This document shows positions 42,762 to 56,565 of a stretch of 64,000 nt of DNA, piece after piece. The notes beneath the pieces were generated by a model. That model searched no databases and had not been told where the DNA came from. It worked only from the letters and a program-made list of their open reading frames with translations. Position 1 is the first letter of the stretch; the number at the start of each line of letters is the position of its first letter. This DNA is from Antechinus flavipes (lineage: Eukaryota): NCBI RefSeq assembly GCF_016432865.1, contig NC_067398.1, positions 3,038,001 to 3,102,000 of the forward strand, in the 5' to 3' direction. Both the position numbers and the translations under genes were made by a program.

Positions 42762-42858
42762 CTTGAAGTACTGAAATGTCCGCTTCCGGTATTCACACCA
42801 CTCCAGGAAAAAGTGAAGACTTCTGAAAAACTGGAAAAGGTCCCGCTTCTCTTCTGTC
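42762..42858 (-). CDS. CENPP: centromere protein P coding exon 5 (remaining exons lie outside the window)
   Basis: ctacAG|G ACA GAA...TTC AAG|GTAAGG, 97 nt. Encodes TEEKRDLFQFFRSLHFFLEWCEYRKRTFQYFK, similar to recalled human AEERKDLFMFFRSLHFFVEWFEYRKRTFKHLK. Confidence 0.95.
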
Positions 42859-46078: not shown

Positions 46079-46356
46079 NNNNNNNNNNNNNNNNNNNNNN
46101 NNNNNNNNNNNNNNNNNNNNNNNNNNNNNNNNNNNNNNNNNNNNNNNNNNNNNNNNNNNNNNNNNNNNNNNNNNNNNNNNNNNNNNNNNNNNNNNNNNNN
46201 NNNNNNNNNNNNNNNNNNNNNNNNNNNNNNNNNNNNNNNNNNNNNNNNNNNNNNNNNNNNNNNNNNNNNNNNNNNNNNNNNNNNNNNNNNNNNNNNNNNN
46301 NNNNNNNNNNNNNNNNNNNNNNNNNNNNNNNNNNNNNNNNNNNNNNNNNNNNNNNN
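46079..46356. other. assembly gap (278 N)
   Basis: Run of n characters. Confidence 0.99.
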
Positions 46357-47967: not shown

Positions 47968-48056
47968 CGGGCCACGAAGCGGCTCAGCTCGCCGTACTCC
48001 ATGGGCTCCAGGATAATGCTCAGCTCGGTGATGGCGGCCGAGAGGTTCTCTTCATC
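47968..48056 (-). CDS. CENPP: centromere protein P coding exon 4
   Basis: ctttAG|GAT GAA...GCC CG|GTAAGA, 89 nt. Encodes DEENLSAAITELSIILEPMEYGELSRFVAR (human NKERLSSAVTDLNIIMEPTECSELSEFVSR). Not in the ORF track because it is too short. Confidence 0.93.
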
Positions 48057-48111
48057 CTAAAGCAGAGAAGCCGTGCAAAGACCCTTTAACTGAACGCGGG
48101 ACCCGTTGGCA

Positions 48112-48290
48112 AGATCCCCAGCCCTCTCCCCCCCGAGCAGGATCCCCAGCAGGATCCTCAGCTCTCTCCCCCCCCAGCAGGATCCCCAGCCCTCTCCCCC
48201 CCAGCAGGATCCCCGGCCTTCCCCTCCCTGCAGGATCCCCAGCCCCCTCTCCCCCAGCAGGATCCCCAGCACTCCCCCCACCCCAGCAGA
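48112..48290. repeat. imperfect repeat of about 26 bp (caggatccccagccctctcccccc)
   Basis: ggatcc recurs about 7 times, separated by C-rich spacers. Confidence 0.8.
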
Positions 48291-51200
48291 ATCCCTGGCC
48301 CTTCCCAGGGGAATCATGACGAAGGATTCCGCCCTGAGAAGTGTGTAAAACGACGCGCTCAGAAACAAACGCCCTTCTCCACTCCCGCTCAGGTTGGGGA
48401 AGGGTCCGTCACTCAGTGCCCCGCAGACTGCGGGGCCTCCAGGGCAGGGACCCTCGGCGCTCGGCGCAACGCCTGCCAGTAGCAGAGAAAGGCTGTTTTG
48501 TTGGCCCGGGGAGCTCTCGGGCCGCCTGTTTGCTCTGCCCTGTCCCCCGCACACCCGGCCCGCCGCACACACTTGGCACCCCCTTCACCTCCCAAGCTCT
48601 TCTCGTCCCACAGAGCGACCTCCAACGCCCCCAGAACCACCTTGTGGCCCCCCGCCCCCGGCCCATCTCCCTGGGCCTACCTCCCCTCCAAGGAAGGAGG
48701 CCTTGACTGCTGGCGTCCAAGGCTCTGCCACGCCTCCCACATCCTTCCTGCCGAGCTCCTCTGACACCCCCCCCACTCTGAGACCCCCAGCCCTTTGCCA
48801 CTGGACACCGCCGGTAAGCTCCGGAACGCCCGTTGCTGCTTCCCCATCTCCCCTCCTAAGACCCGGCTCGGATCCCAATTGGGCACAAAGTCTTTCCAGA
48901 AACGGCCACTTTTGTCTCGGCCACGGGGGATAGCATCAGTAGGAAGCCGACCGCTGCTCCAGGAGAATAGAAAGTGGGAGAGAGACAACAGATGCGGTGC
49001 CGCCGTTCCCCAGTGCCGCTGTTCCCCGGTGCCACTGTTCCCTGGTGCCTTCCTCTGGGTCCCGATCCCTTAGCGCCGGGCGTCACACAGCAGGCGCTTA
49101 ATAAATGCTTTTGGACTGACTGTGTCAAAGTACGTTAGAGCTTCTCTTCTCAATCCAAAGTTCCCAGATCTCCCCGAGGGAAACCTGGTCGGTGCTTTTA
49201 AGCACTTCCTAGGGAGTAGCGGCCCCCCTTCTCTTAGGAAAGGTGCAAAAGGCAGAGGGTGACAGATGGCGAGGACCCCCCTCGGAGCAGAGCCTCCTGC
49301 CATTCCCAACACGGGGGTGGGGGGGACACCCGGGAGCAGCAGTTAAGGAGGGGCTCCAGCCTACAGTCTCTGCGGCCACCCGAGCTGCAGGACCGTCTGT
49401 TCGGGCCTAATAAGACAAAGCAGAACTTGTAGCTCCCCCTGGATCGTGTAACCAGACTTTGTCACATCATGAATCATTCTTGCTCAAGATTTCTGGAACC
49501 GTCCCTCCAGAATCCCTTGGGTGCTAGGGATCCATCCCGAGAGGCCGGCCGTCTCCTCGGACGACAAACCTGGCCTTTGTGTTAACGACAGATCAGTCCG
49601 ACTCGTTTCCGGCAGACCAGTGCCCAAGAGAGCTTTTCCTGGACCTTTGTTACCGGCCAAGCGGAGAGAGCTGATCAGCAAAGACCCCGGATTAGAACGG
49701 GCCCTGTCCCAAAGAAGAGGAAAAAGGGAGAAAAACGGCTAAAAAAGAAAACAGAACGAAACCACGGAAACAGGAATAATTACAGCTCTCCTCGGTAGAA
49801 CCCAGTTCGTGGAGTCCTTTAAAGATGCTCAAGAGGAATGTGAGAGAGAAAAAAGAAAAGGGAAATTCTCTGGGGTGGTTACCTTTTAAATGGACAAACT
49901 GTCTTCCCATGAGGGTCGCCTCTCCGGACCATCCCCCTGCAGCTCTGGCTGGGCCTGGCAGGGGCGAAGGCCGGCCTGGGCAGGGTCTCCTCCTCTGCCC
50001 TTGTCTCTCTCCCGGGCCCCGGGGGAGGGCAGGAACAGCCCTTCCAGGCAGGCACTCAACAAACCTGATGCCATGTGAGACCACGGTGTGAGAGCAGCTT
50101 CTTTCTCCTGGCCACGCTCAGGGATGGACGTTTGCCCCCGGCGACCCCTCCAGGTCTCGGAGGAAGCTCTTCTCGCTGCCTCTGAACATCACGCTCTCAC
50201 TTTTCTGATTTCCCTTCAAGCCCAAGGTCATCGAAGGCAGGCCTTCCTTCTCCCTGAAGCCGCGTCGCCGTCGAGTCGGAGCCTTTGGGGACGATGCCGG
50301 CTCCTGTTGCCACGGGGAGGATGCCGGACCTGGATGGCTCAGCTCTGCCGGACAACCTGTCTCTCCAACAGGTCACTCTGCCCGCTGAGGTCAGCCTCGC
50401 CCAGGCAGGGGCCTGAAGAGGAGCCCACTGGAAGCTTGTTCCCCTGCTCCCAGGGTGGAGAGGCCGGTGCTCGAAGCGGGGAGGATCGGCCAGGTGTGAG
50501 ACGCTCGTCGTGGCCCCTGGTCAGCAAGGCAGTTCTGGACCCAATGCCAGGGATGGCCTGAGGCGGGCCTTCGGCCCCGAGCCGCAGCCTTTGCAGTGAG
50601 GGGGCCGGGGCCGGCAAAGTCTGCCGCCGTGTGCCCACAAGAGGGGCCAGAGCCGGGCAGCAAGGACGTGATCCTTAGGTGCCCAGCCTGAGCTGCCCTG
50701 GAAGCCACAGAACACAGCAAGGAAACCCCGCAGAAAGCAGAGTTCCCCCTCCCCGCCACAGGCCCCCAGGCCTGCCTAACACAAAGTTTCAATTCAGGAA
50801 GTCGGGAGGACTGGCCACTCAAGGGGAACCTAAGTCAACGTGCCCTCACTAAGCCCCTATTATGTGCCAGGCACCCACTAAGTGCCGGGAATGAAACACG
50901 GCTGGTGAGCTTTAACTCAAACGCTCAGAGAATCGTCGTCTTGTGGCTCTGAGGCCTCCGGGGGCCCGGCTGGGTCTTGGGGGCTGTTCTGGGCCTGCTC
51001 AACGTTCAGAGACTGGGATGGGAGCAAACCCTCGCCATCATCCTCACCCCTATGGCTGCTGGGGGTGCCGCGACAGGGCAGACAGGAAGCCCGCCGGCCC
51101 CTCCCCACACCGCTGCCCACCACGAGTGCTGGCAAAAGTGAACTAAAGCCGCAGGGAGGTCTCCATGGGGGCCCCCAGCCACGGGGTCAGGGAGCCCGGG

Positions 51201-53194: not shown

Positions 53195-53283
53195 CTGCGT
53201 CTCCAGGAGCTGGAACTCCAGGTGAAAGGTCACATCTCGGCAGCCTCCGGCCAGGCGGCCCTTTCTCAGGATCCTGGGCCCGT
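53195..53283 (-). CDS. CENPP: centromere protein P coding exon 3
   Basis: tcgcAG|AC GGG...ACG CAG|GTGAGT, 89 nt. Encodes NGPRILRKGRLAGGCRDVTFHLEFQLLETQ (human ...HRLSGNCHMVTFQLEFQILEIQ). Confidence 0.94.
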
Positions 53284-53415
53284 CTGCGACACGGAAAAGA
53301 GACGTGAACGTCGGCGAGCCCTGGGCCGGTTCTTTGGGGAGCCCTGCCGCTGCCCTGTGCCCGGGGGGCCGCCCTCCCGACGTGCCCTTTGGAGGGGGCT
53401 GGCACACAGCAGACA

Positions 53416-53655
53416 CAGGCGCTTCCTGTGATCAGCCCCGCCCCTCCTCCCCTGCCCCACACAGTAGGGCTTCCTGTGATCAGCCCCGCCCCTCCTCCCC
53501 TGCCGCACACAGTAGGGCTGCCTGTGATCCGCTCCGCCCCTCCTCCCCTCCTCCCCTGCCGCACACAGTAGGGCTTCCTGTGATCAGCCCCGCCCCTCCT
53601 CCCCTGCCCCACACAGTAGGGCTGCCTGTGATTAGCCCAGGCCCCACACACAGTG
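53416..53655. repeat. 48-bp VNTR, about 4.5 copies
   Basis: gcttcctgtgatcagccccgcccctcctcccctgccccacacagtagg; units start at 53421, 53469, 53517, 53573 and 53621. Confidence 0.92.
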
Positions 53656-54435
53656 GGTGCTTATTGCGCTTAGTCTAGGTGGCGTCCCGCAGACGTGCCC
53701 AGGGAAAAGCGGAAAGAGGGAGCGTGAAGAGGCCGTGGAGACGCCACAGCCCTGCAATCAGCGGGGCGAGACCCCTGGCCCGGAGCAGTCACCAAGCCAC
53801 CCCCAGGCCAAGGCGATGAGCACGGCGCCCTTGGGGCGCACTTGAGGCCGGCCTGTCAGACGGGCATCTGTGAAGCTGGCTCTGGTGCCACGCTCCCCAT
53901 GACACAGCCACGGGCTTGGGAGGGGGTCCTGCTCTGCCCTCCCCCAGCCACAAAGCCCTGGGGTCTTCTCAGGACGCCCCGCCCCCAGCCCTCCCCGCCC
54001 TCTGTGGGTGAGCTCCTATTTACTCAGACCACGGCTCGTCAGCCCCCGGCTCCGAGGGTTGTTTCCCCACCGGTCGCCGAGCAGGGCTGGCTCCTGCCCT
54101 TTTCCTCTCGCCGGGGCCCTCCTGGGCACACGACGGGCACCCGGTGACTACCAGCCTCTCTCCCAGGCTCGGCTGAGGCGGCTGCCTCTCACCCACGTGC
54201 CCCCGGACACTCACTGAGCCAGGAAACTTCCCGGAGGAGCCCAGCTGGCTTTCGGGAACCCCCCCTCCATCCCTTTTCCTCCCAGGGGCCCGGGAGCAGG
54301 GGCCGCCCCCCCAAGCGACGCCGGGTGTCTGAGCCGCGGCTGCCCAGGACTGGGTGAGGGAGCGGGCGTCTGAGGCACGGGTCAGAGCGAAGCCTCGGGA
54401 AACTGCCCGGGACCAGGGAAAACCAAGACGCTCAC

Positions 54436-54620
54436 TCCTCTGCATCCCCTCCGCGCTTCCCGGGAGCTCGGCTCTGGTCACGGAGTAATCGGTTATCCTG
54501 ATGCCGGTGACCTCAGAGAGGAAGGAGAGGCCGGATTCCAGGCGCTCAAGCTGGGCTTCCGAGGCCCTGGCAGGCTCCGCTCGGCCCGCGGGAGGCTGCT
54601 CGTCATCCTGGCAGAAACGT
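54436..54620 (-). CDS. CENPP: centromere protein P coding exon 2
   Basis: ttgcAG|A CGT TTC...AGG A|GTGAGC, 185 nt. Contains QLERLESGLSFLSEVTGIRITDYS (human QLGHLESELSFLSTLTGINIRNHS). Confidence 0.93.
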
Positions 54621-54719: not shown

Positions 54720-55095
54720 CGGCGCACGTGTGTGTGGCGCCGGCGTGAGCACAACTACAAGGTGCGCACACACACGTGTACCTGTGCATCGTGAGCATGG
54801 GAGCACCCGGGCGAGAACACGCATGTGTGTGAGCGCTTGTGTGCTCACAGCGTATATCTGTGTGCCGTGTGCATGCATGCGTGCCCCAGCACGAGAACAT
54901 GTATGTGTATGAAGGCTTGTGCGCTCGCAGTGTATACCTGTGTGCTGTGCATGTACATGTGTGCATGTGCATGTGAGCCAGTGCGAGAGCATGCATGTGT
55001 GTGTTATGCTCACAGTGTGTATCTGTGTGCCCCGCGCAGGTGTGTACGCGTGTAGCTGCATATCCCTGTCCGCATCCCTTTGCTGTGCACTGTGC
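54720..55095. repeat. TG/CA-rich alternating purine-pyrimidine tract
   Basis: About 370 bp of gtgtgc/atgtgt/gcatgc units in CENPP intron 1. Confidence 0.8.
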
Positions 55096-55395
55096 AAGTT
55101 TGGGGAAGGCCCCTCCCCCCGCGCCCACGCCCGCTCTCCCACCAGCTTCCCATCGGCTCCCTGACCCCGGGGCCCGGCTCTGCTATGACAGATGCCCCTC
55201 CCCCACCTGCCAACCGGACAGGTGTGCCGGTGGGCCACAGCCCTTCCCCTCCAGGGCACAAGGGGGCACCTGCCGCACTCCCTGTCCCCACCCCCGTCAG
55301 CTGCCAGGCACGCCTTCCCCTCAGCTGGAACCGGCCCCAGCTCCCGCCTCCGAGCCCCCGCCCACCCGCCGCACCACCCACGACTGGGGGCCTAC

Positions 55396-55658
55396 CGGGT
55401 CGGGTCCGGGTCCGGAACCGGGTCGGCTTCGGGACGACTCCGCTCGAGGCGCCTGCGCAGCGCGGCAATCTCGGCCCGCAGGGTCCGGAGCTCCTGCTGC
55501 TGCCGCAGCCGCTGCCGCTGCCGCCGCTGCTGCTCCTCCTGCTCCCGCCGCTGCTCCCGCCGCTGCCACTGCCGCTGCCGCTGCCGCTGCTCCTTCAGCA
55601 GCTGCTCCCGCCGCTGCCGCCGCCGCTCCTGCTGCTCCCGCCGCCGCTGCTCTTCCAT
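55396..55658 (-). CDS. CENPP: centromere protein P coding exon 1 with a Q/R/E-rich N-terminal extension
   Basis: ACC ATG G Kozak start, donor ACC CG|GTAGGC, 263 nt. ELRTLRAEIAALRR matches human EVRALQAEIAALRR, and the phase joins exon 2. Confidence 0.88.
55491..55652. repeat. imperfect CNG (CAG/CGG/GAG) coding trinucleotide tract
   Basis: About 54 consecutive codons are almost all CAG, CGG or GAG on the minus strand. Confidence 0.9.
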
Positions 55659-55899
55659 GGTCTGTGCAGCCCCAGCGGAGAGGGTGCGGGGGTGGGGCGC
55701 GCGCCGGAGCCCAGCTGTTCAAGGCTCCCGCGCGCTGCCGGCACAGACCAACTCCTCACACTTGGGGGGGGAGACGGGGCTGGGGGCGGCGCGGGCCTGG
55801 CCGAGACCACCCCCCACAGAGTGTGTCCGAGACAGCGCTGAAGAAAACGTCGTCCCCACCAGCCCGCCCTCCCTGGAGGGTCCGTCACCCAGGCTGGGG

Positions 55900-56426
55900 A
55901 GCGAATAGCCGGCGACCCGTGGCTTCCGAACCCCTCCCCTGGAGGACCAGTTTACTTCGGAGCTGGTCCTTGAGTGACGTCAGAGTCCGGCACGGACAAA
56001 AGCTTCAACATCTCGATATGCGCATGCGCCTCGCTGAGGAGGCGGGGTCAATGAGCCCCAGCAGGAAGTTGAGGTAGAGTAGGGGAAAAGAAGGAAGGTG
56101 GTGTCACTTTATTTTGCTTCCCTCTGGATAACCGAGTTCGGCTGGCGTTCAAGGGTTCCCTAACTTAGCAGACAAGTGATTTCGATCCATCACCACGAGT
56201 CGCGACGGAGATACCAGACAAGATGCAAAGAAGACAGGGATATAGTCCGGAAACGGAGCGACCGACGGGGCGGGAACGGAGTCCCGGAACTTTGGATAGG
56301 GGAATCCGGGTCCCGCTTGCGGGGAAGAAGGAGAACGGACAGCTGCGCATTCACGTGACCGGAAGTCGGAAGCACGTGTATCGGAAGCCCGGGCCGGGCG
56401 AAGAGGTTCAGCTAGTGAAGAGCACC
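55900..56426. promoter_or_regulatory. bidirectional CpG-island promoter shared by CENPP and NOL8
   Basis: Divergent ATGs at 55658 (-) and 56427 (+). Motifs: CRE TGACGTCA 55975-55982, NRF1 GCGCATGCGC 56020-56029, E-boxes TCACGTGA 56351-56358 and CACGTG 56373-56378, ETS CCGGAAGT 56359-56366. Confidence 0.85.
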
Positions 56427-56565
56427 ATGGCTGCGAGCCCCGGAGAACGGCGGCTCTTCGTGGGCGGCCTCGGGCCCTCGGTCACGCAGGACGACGTGCG
56501 TGCGCAGCTGGGCCGCTTCGGGGTCGTGTCCTCCGTGGAGCTCGTGTCTCGGGTAAATGAGCTCG
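56427..56565 (+). CDS. NOL8: nucleolar protein 8 coding exon 1 (RRM start)
   Basis: ACC ATG G start and CTC G|GTAAGG donor, 139 nt. Encodes MAASPGERRLFVGGLGPSVTQDDVRAQLGRFG (RNP2 LFVGGL). Confidence 0.93.

What the first reader, a model, noticed from the sequence alone, without database searches (positions are those of the whole stretch)
55396..55658. CENP-P with an about 49-residue Q/R/E helical N-terminal extension encoded by a CNG repeat
The only in-frame ATG has a perfect Kozak (ACCATGG) and lies 49 codons upstream of where the human N-terminus aligns (E63 here corresponds to human E14). The first 55 residues contain 20 R, 19 Q and 10 E with no Pro or Gly. That composition predicts a long charged single alpha-helix or coiled coil, trichohyalin-like and net basic. 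CENP-P pairs with CENP-O in the inner-kinetochore CENP-OPQUR complex through its N-terminal helices and RWD domains. A repeat-expanded basic rod there could be a lineage-specific kinetochore or DNA contact. The CAG/CGG tract is hairpin-prone, so length may vary among individuals and species.
Basis: partly seen in the sequence, partly recalled or inferred. Interest (0 to 1): 0.7.

Follow-up and report, generated by a model that had tools for sequence, protein, structure and literature searches.

The report
Repeat-built helical extension on marsupial CENP-P
The first exon of the kinetochore gene CENPP in the yellow-footed antechinus carries a triplet-repeat stretch that adds about 49 arginine/glutamine/glutamate residues, predicted to form one long helix; related carnivorous marsupials share it at very different lengths, other mammals lack it, and its function is unknown and may be neutral.

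Summary
On the minus strand, 55658-55396 is the first coding exon of CENPP. The five in-window exons are 100% identical, exon by exon, to RefSeq XP_051833587.1 (centromere protein P, Antechinus flavipes, 339 aa). The extension is therefore already in a public gene model, but I found no paper that describes it.

Codons 1-55 are 20 CGG, 19 CAG, 9 GAG and 3 CTG, giving 20 R, 19 Q, 10 E and no P or G.

The extension is specific to Dasyuridae and its length varies widely. There are 55 residues before the conserved ELRxLRAE helix in Antechinus, 60 in Sminthopsis and 154 in the Tasmanian devil. Other Australian marsupials and Dromiciops have 10-12, and a human-type primate ortholog has 6. The bilby has an unrelated repeat at the same place.

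AlphaFold2 predicts one continuous helix: residues 2-73 in Antechinus and 2-172 in the devil. A low-confidence linker joins it to the double-RWD body.

Human CENP-P residues 1-52 are absent from all solved CCAN structures. The rod therefore sits on a free N-terminal arm, not at the CENP-O interface.

Net charge is not conserved (+11, +10, -5), which argues against a conserved basic DNA contact. No RNA data could be obtained, so translation is inferred, not shown.

The parts
55396..55658 (-). CENPP exon 1, coding part (87 codons + 2 nt; phase-2 intron follows)
   Evidence: ORF and donor read directly. The translation equals residues 1-87 of XP_051833587.1 (P0033).
55494..55658 (-). Codons 1-55: the R/Q/E extension encoded by interrupted CGG/CAG/GAG triplets
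   Evidence: Codon counts. TRF period-3 array at 55490-55651. Predicted helix with pLDDT 93-98. Alignable with the Sminthopsis and Sarcophilus extensions.
55440..55493 (-). Codons 56-73: the conserved N-terminal helix shared with all mammals (ELRTLRAEIAALRRRLER)
   Evidence: Alignment A1 has invariant columns L60 and E63. This stretch is the C-terminal part of predicted helix 2-73.
55394..55395 (-). Splice donor GT of intron 1
   Evidence: Read directly. The split codon CG|A gives R88, as in P0033.
55719..55721 (-). In-frame TGA 21 codons upstream of the ATG
55659..56426 (.). Interval of 768 nt between the CENPP ATG and the divergent presumed NOL8 ATG (56427, + strand). It is taken to hold a bidirectional CpG-island promoter and both 5'UTRs. 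The TSS is not determined.
   Evidence: Sequence reading and CpG o/e of 0.75-1.29. The NOL8 name comes from earlier notes and from the devil locus layout. The inference is untested.
54436..54620 (-). CENPP exon 2 (linker and start of the helix before the RWD domains)
   Evidence: AG acceptor and GT donor, and the phase fits. The translation equals P0033 residues 89-149.
53195..53283 (-). CENPP exon 3
   Evidence: Equals P0033 residues 151-179.
47968..48056 (-). CENPP exon 4
   Evidence: phmmer against human CENP-P residues 128-154, E 3.9e-4. Equals P0033 residues 180-208.
42762..42858 (-). CENPP exon 5. The later exons lie outside the window.
   Evidence: phmmer against human CENP-P residues 158-188, E 3.9e-10. 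Equals P0033 residues 210-241. tblastn finds no later exon in the window.

Best explanation
This is the true first coding exon of CENPP in Antechinus flavipes.

Origin (inferred). A short ancestral E/R/Q-rich N-terminus (about 10 residues, as in koala, possums and Dromiciops) grew by slippage or duplication of GAG/CGG/CAG triplets inside the CpG-island exon. This happened in the common ancestor of the sampled dasyurids. The tract then kept changing in length: 55, 60 and 154 residues in the three sampled genera.

Product (inferred). Translated from the first AUG, the tract lengthens the N-terminal helix of CENP-P from about 20 to about 72 residues, roughly 11 nm. The helix is highly charged, has almost no hydrophobic residues, and resembles a single alpha-helix.

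Placement. A flexible linker of about 30 residues ties the helix to the double-RWD body. The equivalent human N-terminus is not ordered in any CCAN structure. The rod most likely projects freely from the kinetochore and is sterically tolerated, which would explain why repeat growth recurs here.

Function. Its effect on kinetochore function is probably small or neutral. A modest electrostatic contribution to microtubule or DNA contacts is possible but not indicated.

Shown: gene identity, exon structure, composition, restriction to dasyurids, and the helix prediction. Inferred: transcription and translation from this ATG, the slippage origin, and near-neutrality.
For: Gene identity:
- Exons 4 and 5 hit human CENP-P in the PDB.
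- All five exons equal XP_051833587.1, compared exon by exon.
- Pfam PF13096 scores 242 bits on that protein.
- The AF2 model matches human CENP-P chains with Z 19.
- The devil locus has the expected NOL8 / CENPP (with nested OGN, OMD, ASPN, ECM2) / IPPK layout.

Start codon:
- It is the only ATG in the exon and for 350 nt upstream, in ACCATGG context, with an in-frame stop upstream.
- No downstream Met occurs before residue 146, so skipping this ATG would delete conserved sequence.
- The MEE-x-RRR start and the reading frame to the conserved helix are kept in Antechinus, Sminthopsis and Sarcophilus despite large length changes.
- The ATG and its context are also present in contigs of three further runs.

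Lineage pattern:
- Extension lengths are 55/60/154 in dasyurids, 10-12 in other australidelphians and 6 in a human-type primate ortholog (Mandrillus).
- The shared core (REQL-KEQRQRQ...) aligns among the three dasyurids: exon 1 versus the devil protein gives 63% identity, E 3e-28.

Origin by repeat processes:
- All 20 Arg codons are CGG and all 19 Gln codons are CAG.
- CGG to CAG and CGG to TGG are CpG transitions (established mutational knowledge).

Helix:
- AF2 gives helix 2-73 with pLDDT 93-98 in Antechinus and helix 2-172 with pLDDT 80-97 in the devil. The linker has pLDDT below 50 in both.
- Only 5 of the 55 residues are hydrophobic.

Free arm:
- Human chains are modelled only from residues 53-62 onwards.
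- Pesenti et al. 2022 list the CENP-P N-terminus only as one candidate for an unassigned helix (PMC9235857).
Against: There is no RNA, CAGE, ribosome or peptide evidence. No RNA run was listed, and a search for short transcript-derived fragments found nothing.

All three sense frames and the antisense frames are open across this GC-rich repeat. An open frame alone proves nothing, and frame-keeping in three genera is only moderate evidence.

Gene models in databases are predictions, and the two devil models disagree (400 versus 438 aa).

AF2 confidence for isolated charged helices does not prove a stable helix in solution. The Antechinus tract is Q-rich, with a charged fraction of 0.56, lower than in classical ER/K helices.

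Persistence in all three sampled dasyurid genera could also reflect function rather than tolerance.
Confidence: 0.73

Rival explanations
1. The extension is an adaptive kinetochore innovation. The charged rod would act as an extra microtubule- or DNA/chromatin-contacting arm, or as a spacer, of the CENP-OPQUR complex. It would have been selected in dasyurids, for example under centromere drive.
For: - The extension is retained with a recognisable shared core in all three sampled dasyurid genera.
- An independent repeat has grown at the same N-terminus in the bilby.
- There is precedent for charged arms at centromeres. The basic CENP-Q tail binds microtubules (PMC6162344). The INCENP single alpha-helix binds microtubules (PMC4571873).
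- CENP-O and CENP-P show signatures of positive selection in rodents and primates (PMC10292211).
- The Tasmanian devil had the most kinetochore genes under diversifying selection in one survey (bioRxiv 10.1101/2024.07.10.602950).
Against: Net charge is not conserved (+11, +10, -5) and length varies threefold. Codon usage is purely repeat-like. The bilby repeat is proline-rich and chemically different. There is no functional or expression data.
Confidence: 0.15
2. The repeat is not translated. It would be 5'UTR or promoter CpG-island sequence, and the annotated start would be an artefact of gene prediction. The real protein would start at a non-AUG codon or at a downstream Met.
For: There is no RNA evidence. 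Every frame is open across the repeat. Gene models for relatives choose different starts: an upstream ATG in Sminthopsis and Dromiciops, and 'MVKLFF' in the older devil model.
Against: - The residue aligned with the eutherian Met1 is not Met in any dasyurid.
- The next in-frame Met is residue 146, beyond the conserved helices.
- The ATG, its Kozak context, the MEE start and the frame are kept across genera and in independent contigs.
- There is no upstream ATG for 350 nt.
Confidence: 0.1
3. The tract is an assembly artefact, for example a mis-assembled or chimeric GC-rich repeat.
For: Contigs of three runs break inside the repeat, and the reads tool skipped 55487-55655. The two devil assemblies give different N-termini.
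Against: One contig of a fourth run (X6, record 30) bridges 55486-55666 with 180 letters against 179 in the window. If X6 carries the same 1-nt 5'UTR difference that X1-X3 show just upstream of the ATG, the coding length is identical. Contigs of X1, X2 and X3 enter the repeat from both sides with the same ATG context. Homologous tracts exist in two other genera.
Confidence: 0.02

Closest known systems
Eutherian CENP-P (human Q6IPU0-type, 288 aa; PDB 7R5V, 7PB8, 7QOO chain P)
   Same: It is the orthologous gene with the same neighbours. It has the same short N-terminal helix, linker, helix and double-RWD body (Z 19, 55% identity over model residues 105-339). It matches Pfam PF13096.
   Different: Only 6 residues precede the conserved helix, against 55 here. 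The human N-terminal 52 residues are unresolved in structures, so the role of the part that is extended here is unknown.
CENP-P of other dasyurids (Sminthopsis crassicaudata XP_074140685.1; Sarcophilus harrisii KAM9098797.1)
   Same: They carry a homologous E/R/Q extension with a shared core and the same MEE start. One long helix is predicted for the devil protein; Sminthopsis was not modelled.
   Different: Lengths are 60 and 154 residues. The devil version consists of alternating E-runs and R-runs and has a net charge of -5 instead of +11.
ER/K single alpha-helix (SAH) domains, e.g. the INCENP coil (PMC4571873) and myosin SAH levers (PMC5378345)
   Same: The tract is a long predicted helix that is highly charged, has almost no hydrophobic seam, and has many i/i+4 opposite-charge pairs. 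This is most marked in the devil (72 pairs in 154 residues).
   Different: There is no homology. The Antechinus tract is one third glutamine, with a charged fraction of 0.56 and a strong net positive charge. Monomeric helix stability is untested.
Trichohyalin-type E/R/Q low-complexity repeats
   Same: The amino-acid composition is the same (E, R and Q dominate), and a rod-like helix is predicted.
   Different: The resemblance is in composition only, and I recalled it rather than tested it. No family match was found for the extension.
Yeast Ctf19 (CENP-P ortholog) N-terminal tail
   Same: It is a flexible N-terminal appendage on the same kinetochore subunit, outside the RWD body. In yeast it is known to be a docking site (cohesin loader; from my own knowledge of Hinshaw et al. 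2017, not read here).
   Different: The sequence is unrelated, not repeat-built, and disordered rather than helical. No such role is known in vertebrates.

Membership tests
CENP-P (Pfam PF13096; CENP-O partner in CENP-OPQUR) | Sequence match to the family profile above the curated cut-off | tested here: met
   P0033, which is identical to the window's five exons, scores 242.3 bits against a cut-off of 25, over residues 157-332. Window exons 4 and 5 hit human CENP-P at E 3.9e-4 and 3.9e-10. Exon 1 alone gives no hit.
CENP-P (Pfam PF13096; CENP-O partner in CENP-OPQUR) | Double-RWD fold preceded by a helix | tested here: met
   AF2 model residues 105-339 align to 7R5V_P residues 53-283 with Z 19.2, rmsd 3.8 A and 219 aligned residues. 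Yeast Ctf19 chains give Z 12-14.
CENP-P (Pfam PF13096; CENP-O partner in CENP-OPQUR) | Orthologous genomic position (head-to-head with NOL8; OGN, OMD and ASPN nested in an intron) | tested here: met
   The devil locus layout shows this arrangement. In the window, a divergent ORF with an RRM-like start begins at 56427. OMD, ASPN and NOL8 were named by earlier notes; I did not verify those names independently.
CENP-P (Pfam PF13096; CENP-O partner in CENP-OPQUR) | Binds CENP-O and localises to kinetochores | not testable with these tools
   This needs an experiment. No CENP-O sequence of a dasyurid could be obtained here.
Single alpha-helix (ER/K SAH) domain | Long helix rich in E and R/K with i/i+4 opposite charges and no hydrophobic heptad seam | tested here: inconclusive
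   Antechinus: charged fraction 0.56, 11 i/i+4 pairs in 55 residues, 5 hydrophobic residues, 19 Q. Devil: charged fraction 0.84 and 72 pairs in 154 residues. AF2 predicts a helix with pLDDT above 90. No dedicated SAH predictor was available.
Single alpha-helix (ER/K SAH) domain | Monomeric, stable, non-cooperatively melting helix in solution | not testable with these tools
   This needs circular dichroism and analytical ultracentrifugation on a peptide covering residues 1-75.
Unstable (dynamic) trinucleotide-repeat tract | Long uninterrupted run of one triplet, with length polymorphism among individuals | tested here: not met
   The longest pure runs are 3 units ((CGG)3, (CAG)3), and the tract is interrupted throughout. 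Folding is no better than shuffles. One bridging contig from another labelled organism has the same length. Length differs among genera, not demonstrably among individuals.

The most novel reading that the evidence does not exclude
Australidelphian marsupials have repeatedly built new N-terminal arms on CENP-P. Dasyurids have an E/R/Q single-helix rod that reaches about 170 residues (about 25 nm) in the Tasmanian devil. The bilby has an independent (RAELRAP)n array. Under this reading these arms are adaptive kinetochore innovations, for example an extra microtubule or chromatin tether evolved under centromere drive, analogous to the CENP-Q tail or the INCENP helix.
Probability: 0.12. Interest if true: 0.75.

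Novelty: new variant of a known kind. Interest (0 to 1): 0.4.

Why it matters
CENP-P is a conserved inner-kinetochore subunit, and no function is known for its extreme N-terminus in vertebrates. The dasyurid genes form a natural length series: 6, about 10, 55, 60 and 154 residues, plus an unrelated repeat in the bilby. The series shows that this end of the protein tolerates large charged helical additions. It could be used to ask whether the CENP-P N-terminus is free in the assembled kinetochore and whether a charged rod there affects microtubule or chromatin contacts. It is also a clear case of a coding triplet repeat that creates a predicted single alpha-helix. If the extension is neutral, it is a well-documented curiosity already contained in RefSeq models.

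Tried and rejected
Searches and look-ups that gave nothing:
- Exon 1 alone, and its non-repeat C-terminal 38 residues, against Pfam and the PDB gave no CENP-P hit. Identity had to come from the downstream exons.
- The search for sequencing runs listed no RNA run.
- The reads tool skipped the repeat itself (55487-55655), so repeat length could only be inferred from contig coordinates.
- The look-up of encoding contigs returned no DNA for the devil gene because its range exceeds 100 kb. The koala short isoform is not on record. A DNA-level comparison of exon 1 among species, and any dN/dS estimate, were therefore not possible.
- A word search with the 88-aa exon 1 ORF for short transcript-derived fragments found nothing. 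That search sees only proteins of 48-154 aa, so the blank says little.

Ideas rejected:
- The 51-nt period reported by TRF. Self-identity at lag 51 (0.62) is no higher than at other multiples of three.
- Special hairpin propensity.
- A coiled coil. There are too few hydrophobic residues.

Exons were searched and compared one by one by reference.

Full report
**What is in the sequence.**

The feature is on the minus strand. An ATG whose A is at 55658 sits in ACCATGG context. It opens an 88-codon frame that reaches a GT donor at 55395-55394. The coding part of the exon is 55658-55396, which is 263 nt, or 87 codons plus two bases.

Their codons are CGG x20, CAG x19, GAG x9 and CTG x3. The third codon position is G in 54 of 55 codons. 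TRF calls a period-3 array at 55490-55651.

The 51-nt period that TRF also lists is not real. Self-identity at lag 51 is no higher than at other multiples of three.

The composition is far beyond chance. None of 20000 shuffles reaches it, and no other open 55-residue stretch in any frame of the window does.

55658 is the only minus-strand ATG between 55396 and 56010. An in-frame TGA lies at 55721-55719.

**Gene identity.**

Exon 1 alone matches nothing in Pfam or the PDB. Reading the minus-strand open stretches downstream gave candidate exons with canonical AG/GT sites and fitting phases: 54620-54436, 53283-53195, 48056-47968 and 42858-42762.

Searched one at a time by reference, the last two hit human CENP-P. 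Exon 4 matches residues 128-154 at E 3.9e-4, and exon 5 matches residues 158-188 at E 3.9e-10.

A search of the representative library with the 32-residue exon 5 returned 31 CENP-P proteins. A word search seeded with one of them gave named orthologs.

Each of the five exon translations is found, without a mismatch, at the expected place in P0033. P0033 is RefSeq XP_051833587.1, 'centromere protein P [Antechinus flavipes]', 339 aa. The window is therefore Antechinus flavipes, a dasyurid marsupial. The extension is already part of a public gene model.

I made no search with a joined spliced model. The comparison was exon by exon.

Further support for the assignment:
- P0033 matches Pfam PF13096 at 242 bits.
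- Its AlphaFold2 model aligns to human CENP-P chains with Z 19.
- The Tasmanian devil locus shows the expected order: a 1196-aa divergent neighbour (presumed NOL8), then CENPP spanning 120 kb with OGN-, OMD-, ASPN- and ECM2-like genes nested in it, then IPPK.
- This agrees with earlier notes on this window that named NOL8, OMD and ASPN.

Exons 6 onwards are not in the window.

**Is the repeat translated?**

I could not obtain RNA evidence. No RNA run was listed. A search for short transcript-derived fragments found nothing. The reads tool skipped the repeat itself. Translation is therefore inferred, from these points:
- The ATG is the first AUG for any transcript start within 350 nt upstream, and it has a strong context.
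- The residue aligned with the eutherian Met1 is not Met in dasyurids. The next in-frame Met is residue 146, so another start would delete conserved sequence.
- Antechinus, Sminthopsis and Sarcophilus all keep an MEE-x-RRR start in frame with the conserved helix, despite large length changes.
- Contigs of three other runs carry the same ATG and context.

An open frame by itself proves nothing here. All six frames are open across this GC-rich repeat.

**Is the assembly sound?**

One contig of run X6 bridges 55486-55666 with 180 letters against 179 in the window. Contigs of X1-X3 show a 1-nt difference in the 5'UTR just upstream of the ATG. If X6 shares that difference, the coding length is the same. 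Contigs of X1-X3 enter the repeat from both sides.

**Comparative picture.**

The number of residues before the conserved ELRxLRAE motif is as follows:

| Species | Residues before motif | Note |
|---|---|---|
| Antechinus | 55 | |
| Sminthopsis crassicaudata | 60 | counted from the internal Met |
| Sarcophilus harrisii, newer assembly | 154 | |
| Sarcophilus harrisii, older RefSeq model | 68 | different start |
| Trichosurus | 12 | |
| Petaurus, koala, Dromiciops | 10 | |
| Human-type primate protein | 6 | |

The three dasyurid extensions share an alignable core. Window exon 1 against the devil protein gives 63% identity, E 3e-28. The expansion therefore predates the split of the three sampled dasyurid genera.

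The short ancestral N-terminus (for example MDREREEQQQ) already consists of E, R and Q, so it is a plausible seed.

The exclusive use of CGG for Arg and CAG for Gln points to repeat processes rather than residue-by-residue selection. So does the fact that CGG to CAG and CGG to TGG are CpG transitions. This last step is inference.

The bilby protein (XP_074055199.1) has a different, proline-containing (RAELRAP)n array of about 73 residues at the same place. That is an independent event.

**Structure.**

With a 40-sequence alignment, AlphaFold2 predicts the following for the Antechinus protein:
- one helix over residues 2-73, with pLDDT 93-98 over residues 1-60;
- a linker over residues 75-102, with pLDDT below 50;
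- a helix over residues 104-126;
- the double-RWD body.

For the devil protein, the helix spans residues 2-172 with pLDDT 80-97.

The tract has only 5 hydrophobic residues in 55, so a coiled coil is unlikely. A single alpha-helix or a helix-prone disordered arm fits better.

Human CENP-P is modelled only from residues 53-62 onwards in 7R5V, 7PB8, 7QOO and 7XHO. Pesenti et al. 2022 mention the CENP-P N-terminus only as one candidate for an unassigned short helix (PMC9235857). The extension therefore lengthens a tethered, unresolved N-terminal helix.

**Function.**

Net charge is +11 in Antechinus, +10 in Sminthopsis and -5 in the devil. A conserved basic DNA-binding role is therefore unlikely. 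What the three share is a long, highly charged helix.

My best reading (confidence 0.73) is a translated, slippage-derived extension that is sterically tolerated and nearly neutral.

An adaptive arm is the main rival (0.15). Its support is as follows:
- The basic CENP-Q tail binds microtubules (PMC6162344).
- The INCENP single alpha-helix binds microtubules (PMC4571873).
- CENP-O and CENP-P show signatures of positive selection (PMC10292211).
- In a recent survey, the Tasmanian devil had the most kinetochore genes under diversifying selection (bioRxiv 10.1101/2024.07.10.602950).

A non-translated repeat (0.10) and an assembly artefact (0.02) are less likely.

Fold energies equal those of shuffles, the repeat is heavily interrupted, and one other labelled organism has the same length.

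**Novelty.**

The protein sequence is in RefSeq. Full-text searches for CENP-P with marsupial or Tasmanian devil found no description of the extension. I class it as a new variant of a known kind. It is a real, neatly documented lineage-specific feature of moderate interest, and its functional meaning is open.

Noticed in passing
P0008 (Macrotis lagotis XP_074055199.1), residues 1-73: The bilby CENP-P has an independent N-terminal repeat, (RAELRAP)n with 9 prolines. It looks like serial duplication of the conserved RAELAALRAE helix itself and is unrelated to the dasyurid E/R/Q tract.
   Followed up: partly
P0001 versus P0032 (Sarcophilus harrisii): Two public devil CENP-P models differ at the N-terminus. 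One is 400 aa and starts MVKLFF. The other is 438 aa and has about 95 more residues of E-runs and R-runs. The cause could be a collapsed repeat in one assembly, a length polymorphism, or a modelling difference.
   Followed up: no
window 55700-55750 (minus strand): Sminthopsis and Dromiciops gene models start at an upstream in-frame ATG (M-C/R-RQRAG-A/G-LNSW...). The same nucleotides are conserved in Antechinus, but there the codon is CTG and it is out of frame with the 55658 ATG. This looks like a conserved 5'UTR or promoter element rather than coding sequence.
   Followed up: partly
window 54800-55040 (CENPP intron 1): A TG/CA-rich GTGTGCATG-type repeat shows contig depth up to about 275, against 10-20 beside it, with several alternative joints in runs X1, X2 and X6. 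It is a multi-copy or unstable repeat.
   Followed up: no
window 55416 and 55662-55665: All four runs laid read G instead of A at 55416, which is a synonymous Val codon in exon 1. Runs X1-X3 read TCGGAC or TCTGAC instead of TCTGT just upstream of the ATG, a 1-nt longer 5'UTR. The window's individual or assembly therefore differs from all sampled runs at these sites.
   Followed up: no
window 56427 onward (+ strand): A divergent ORF begins at an ACCATGG 769 nt from the CENPP ATG and starts with an RRM-like MAASPGERRLFVGGL... sequence. It is presumably NOL8 exon 1. CRE-like TGACGTCA and NRF1-like GCGCATGCGC motifs lie between the two starts at about 55975-56030.
   Followed up: no
window 46079-46356: A run of N (assembly gap or masked stretch) lies inside CENPP intron 4. 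I left it untouched.
   Followed up: no
window 48100-48400 and 53300-53660 (minus strand): GC-rich minisatellite-like arrays in CENPP introns translate as repeated GILLGGERAGDPAG-like and ITGSPTVCGRGGGAG-like units. They are probably non-coding tandem repeats.
   Followed up: no
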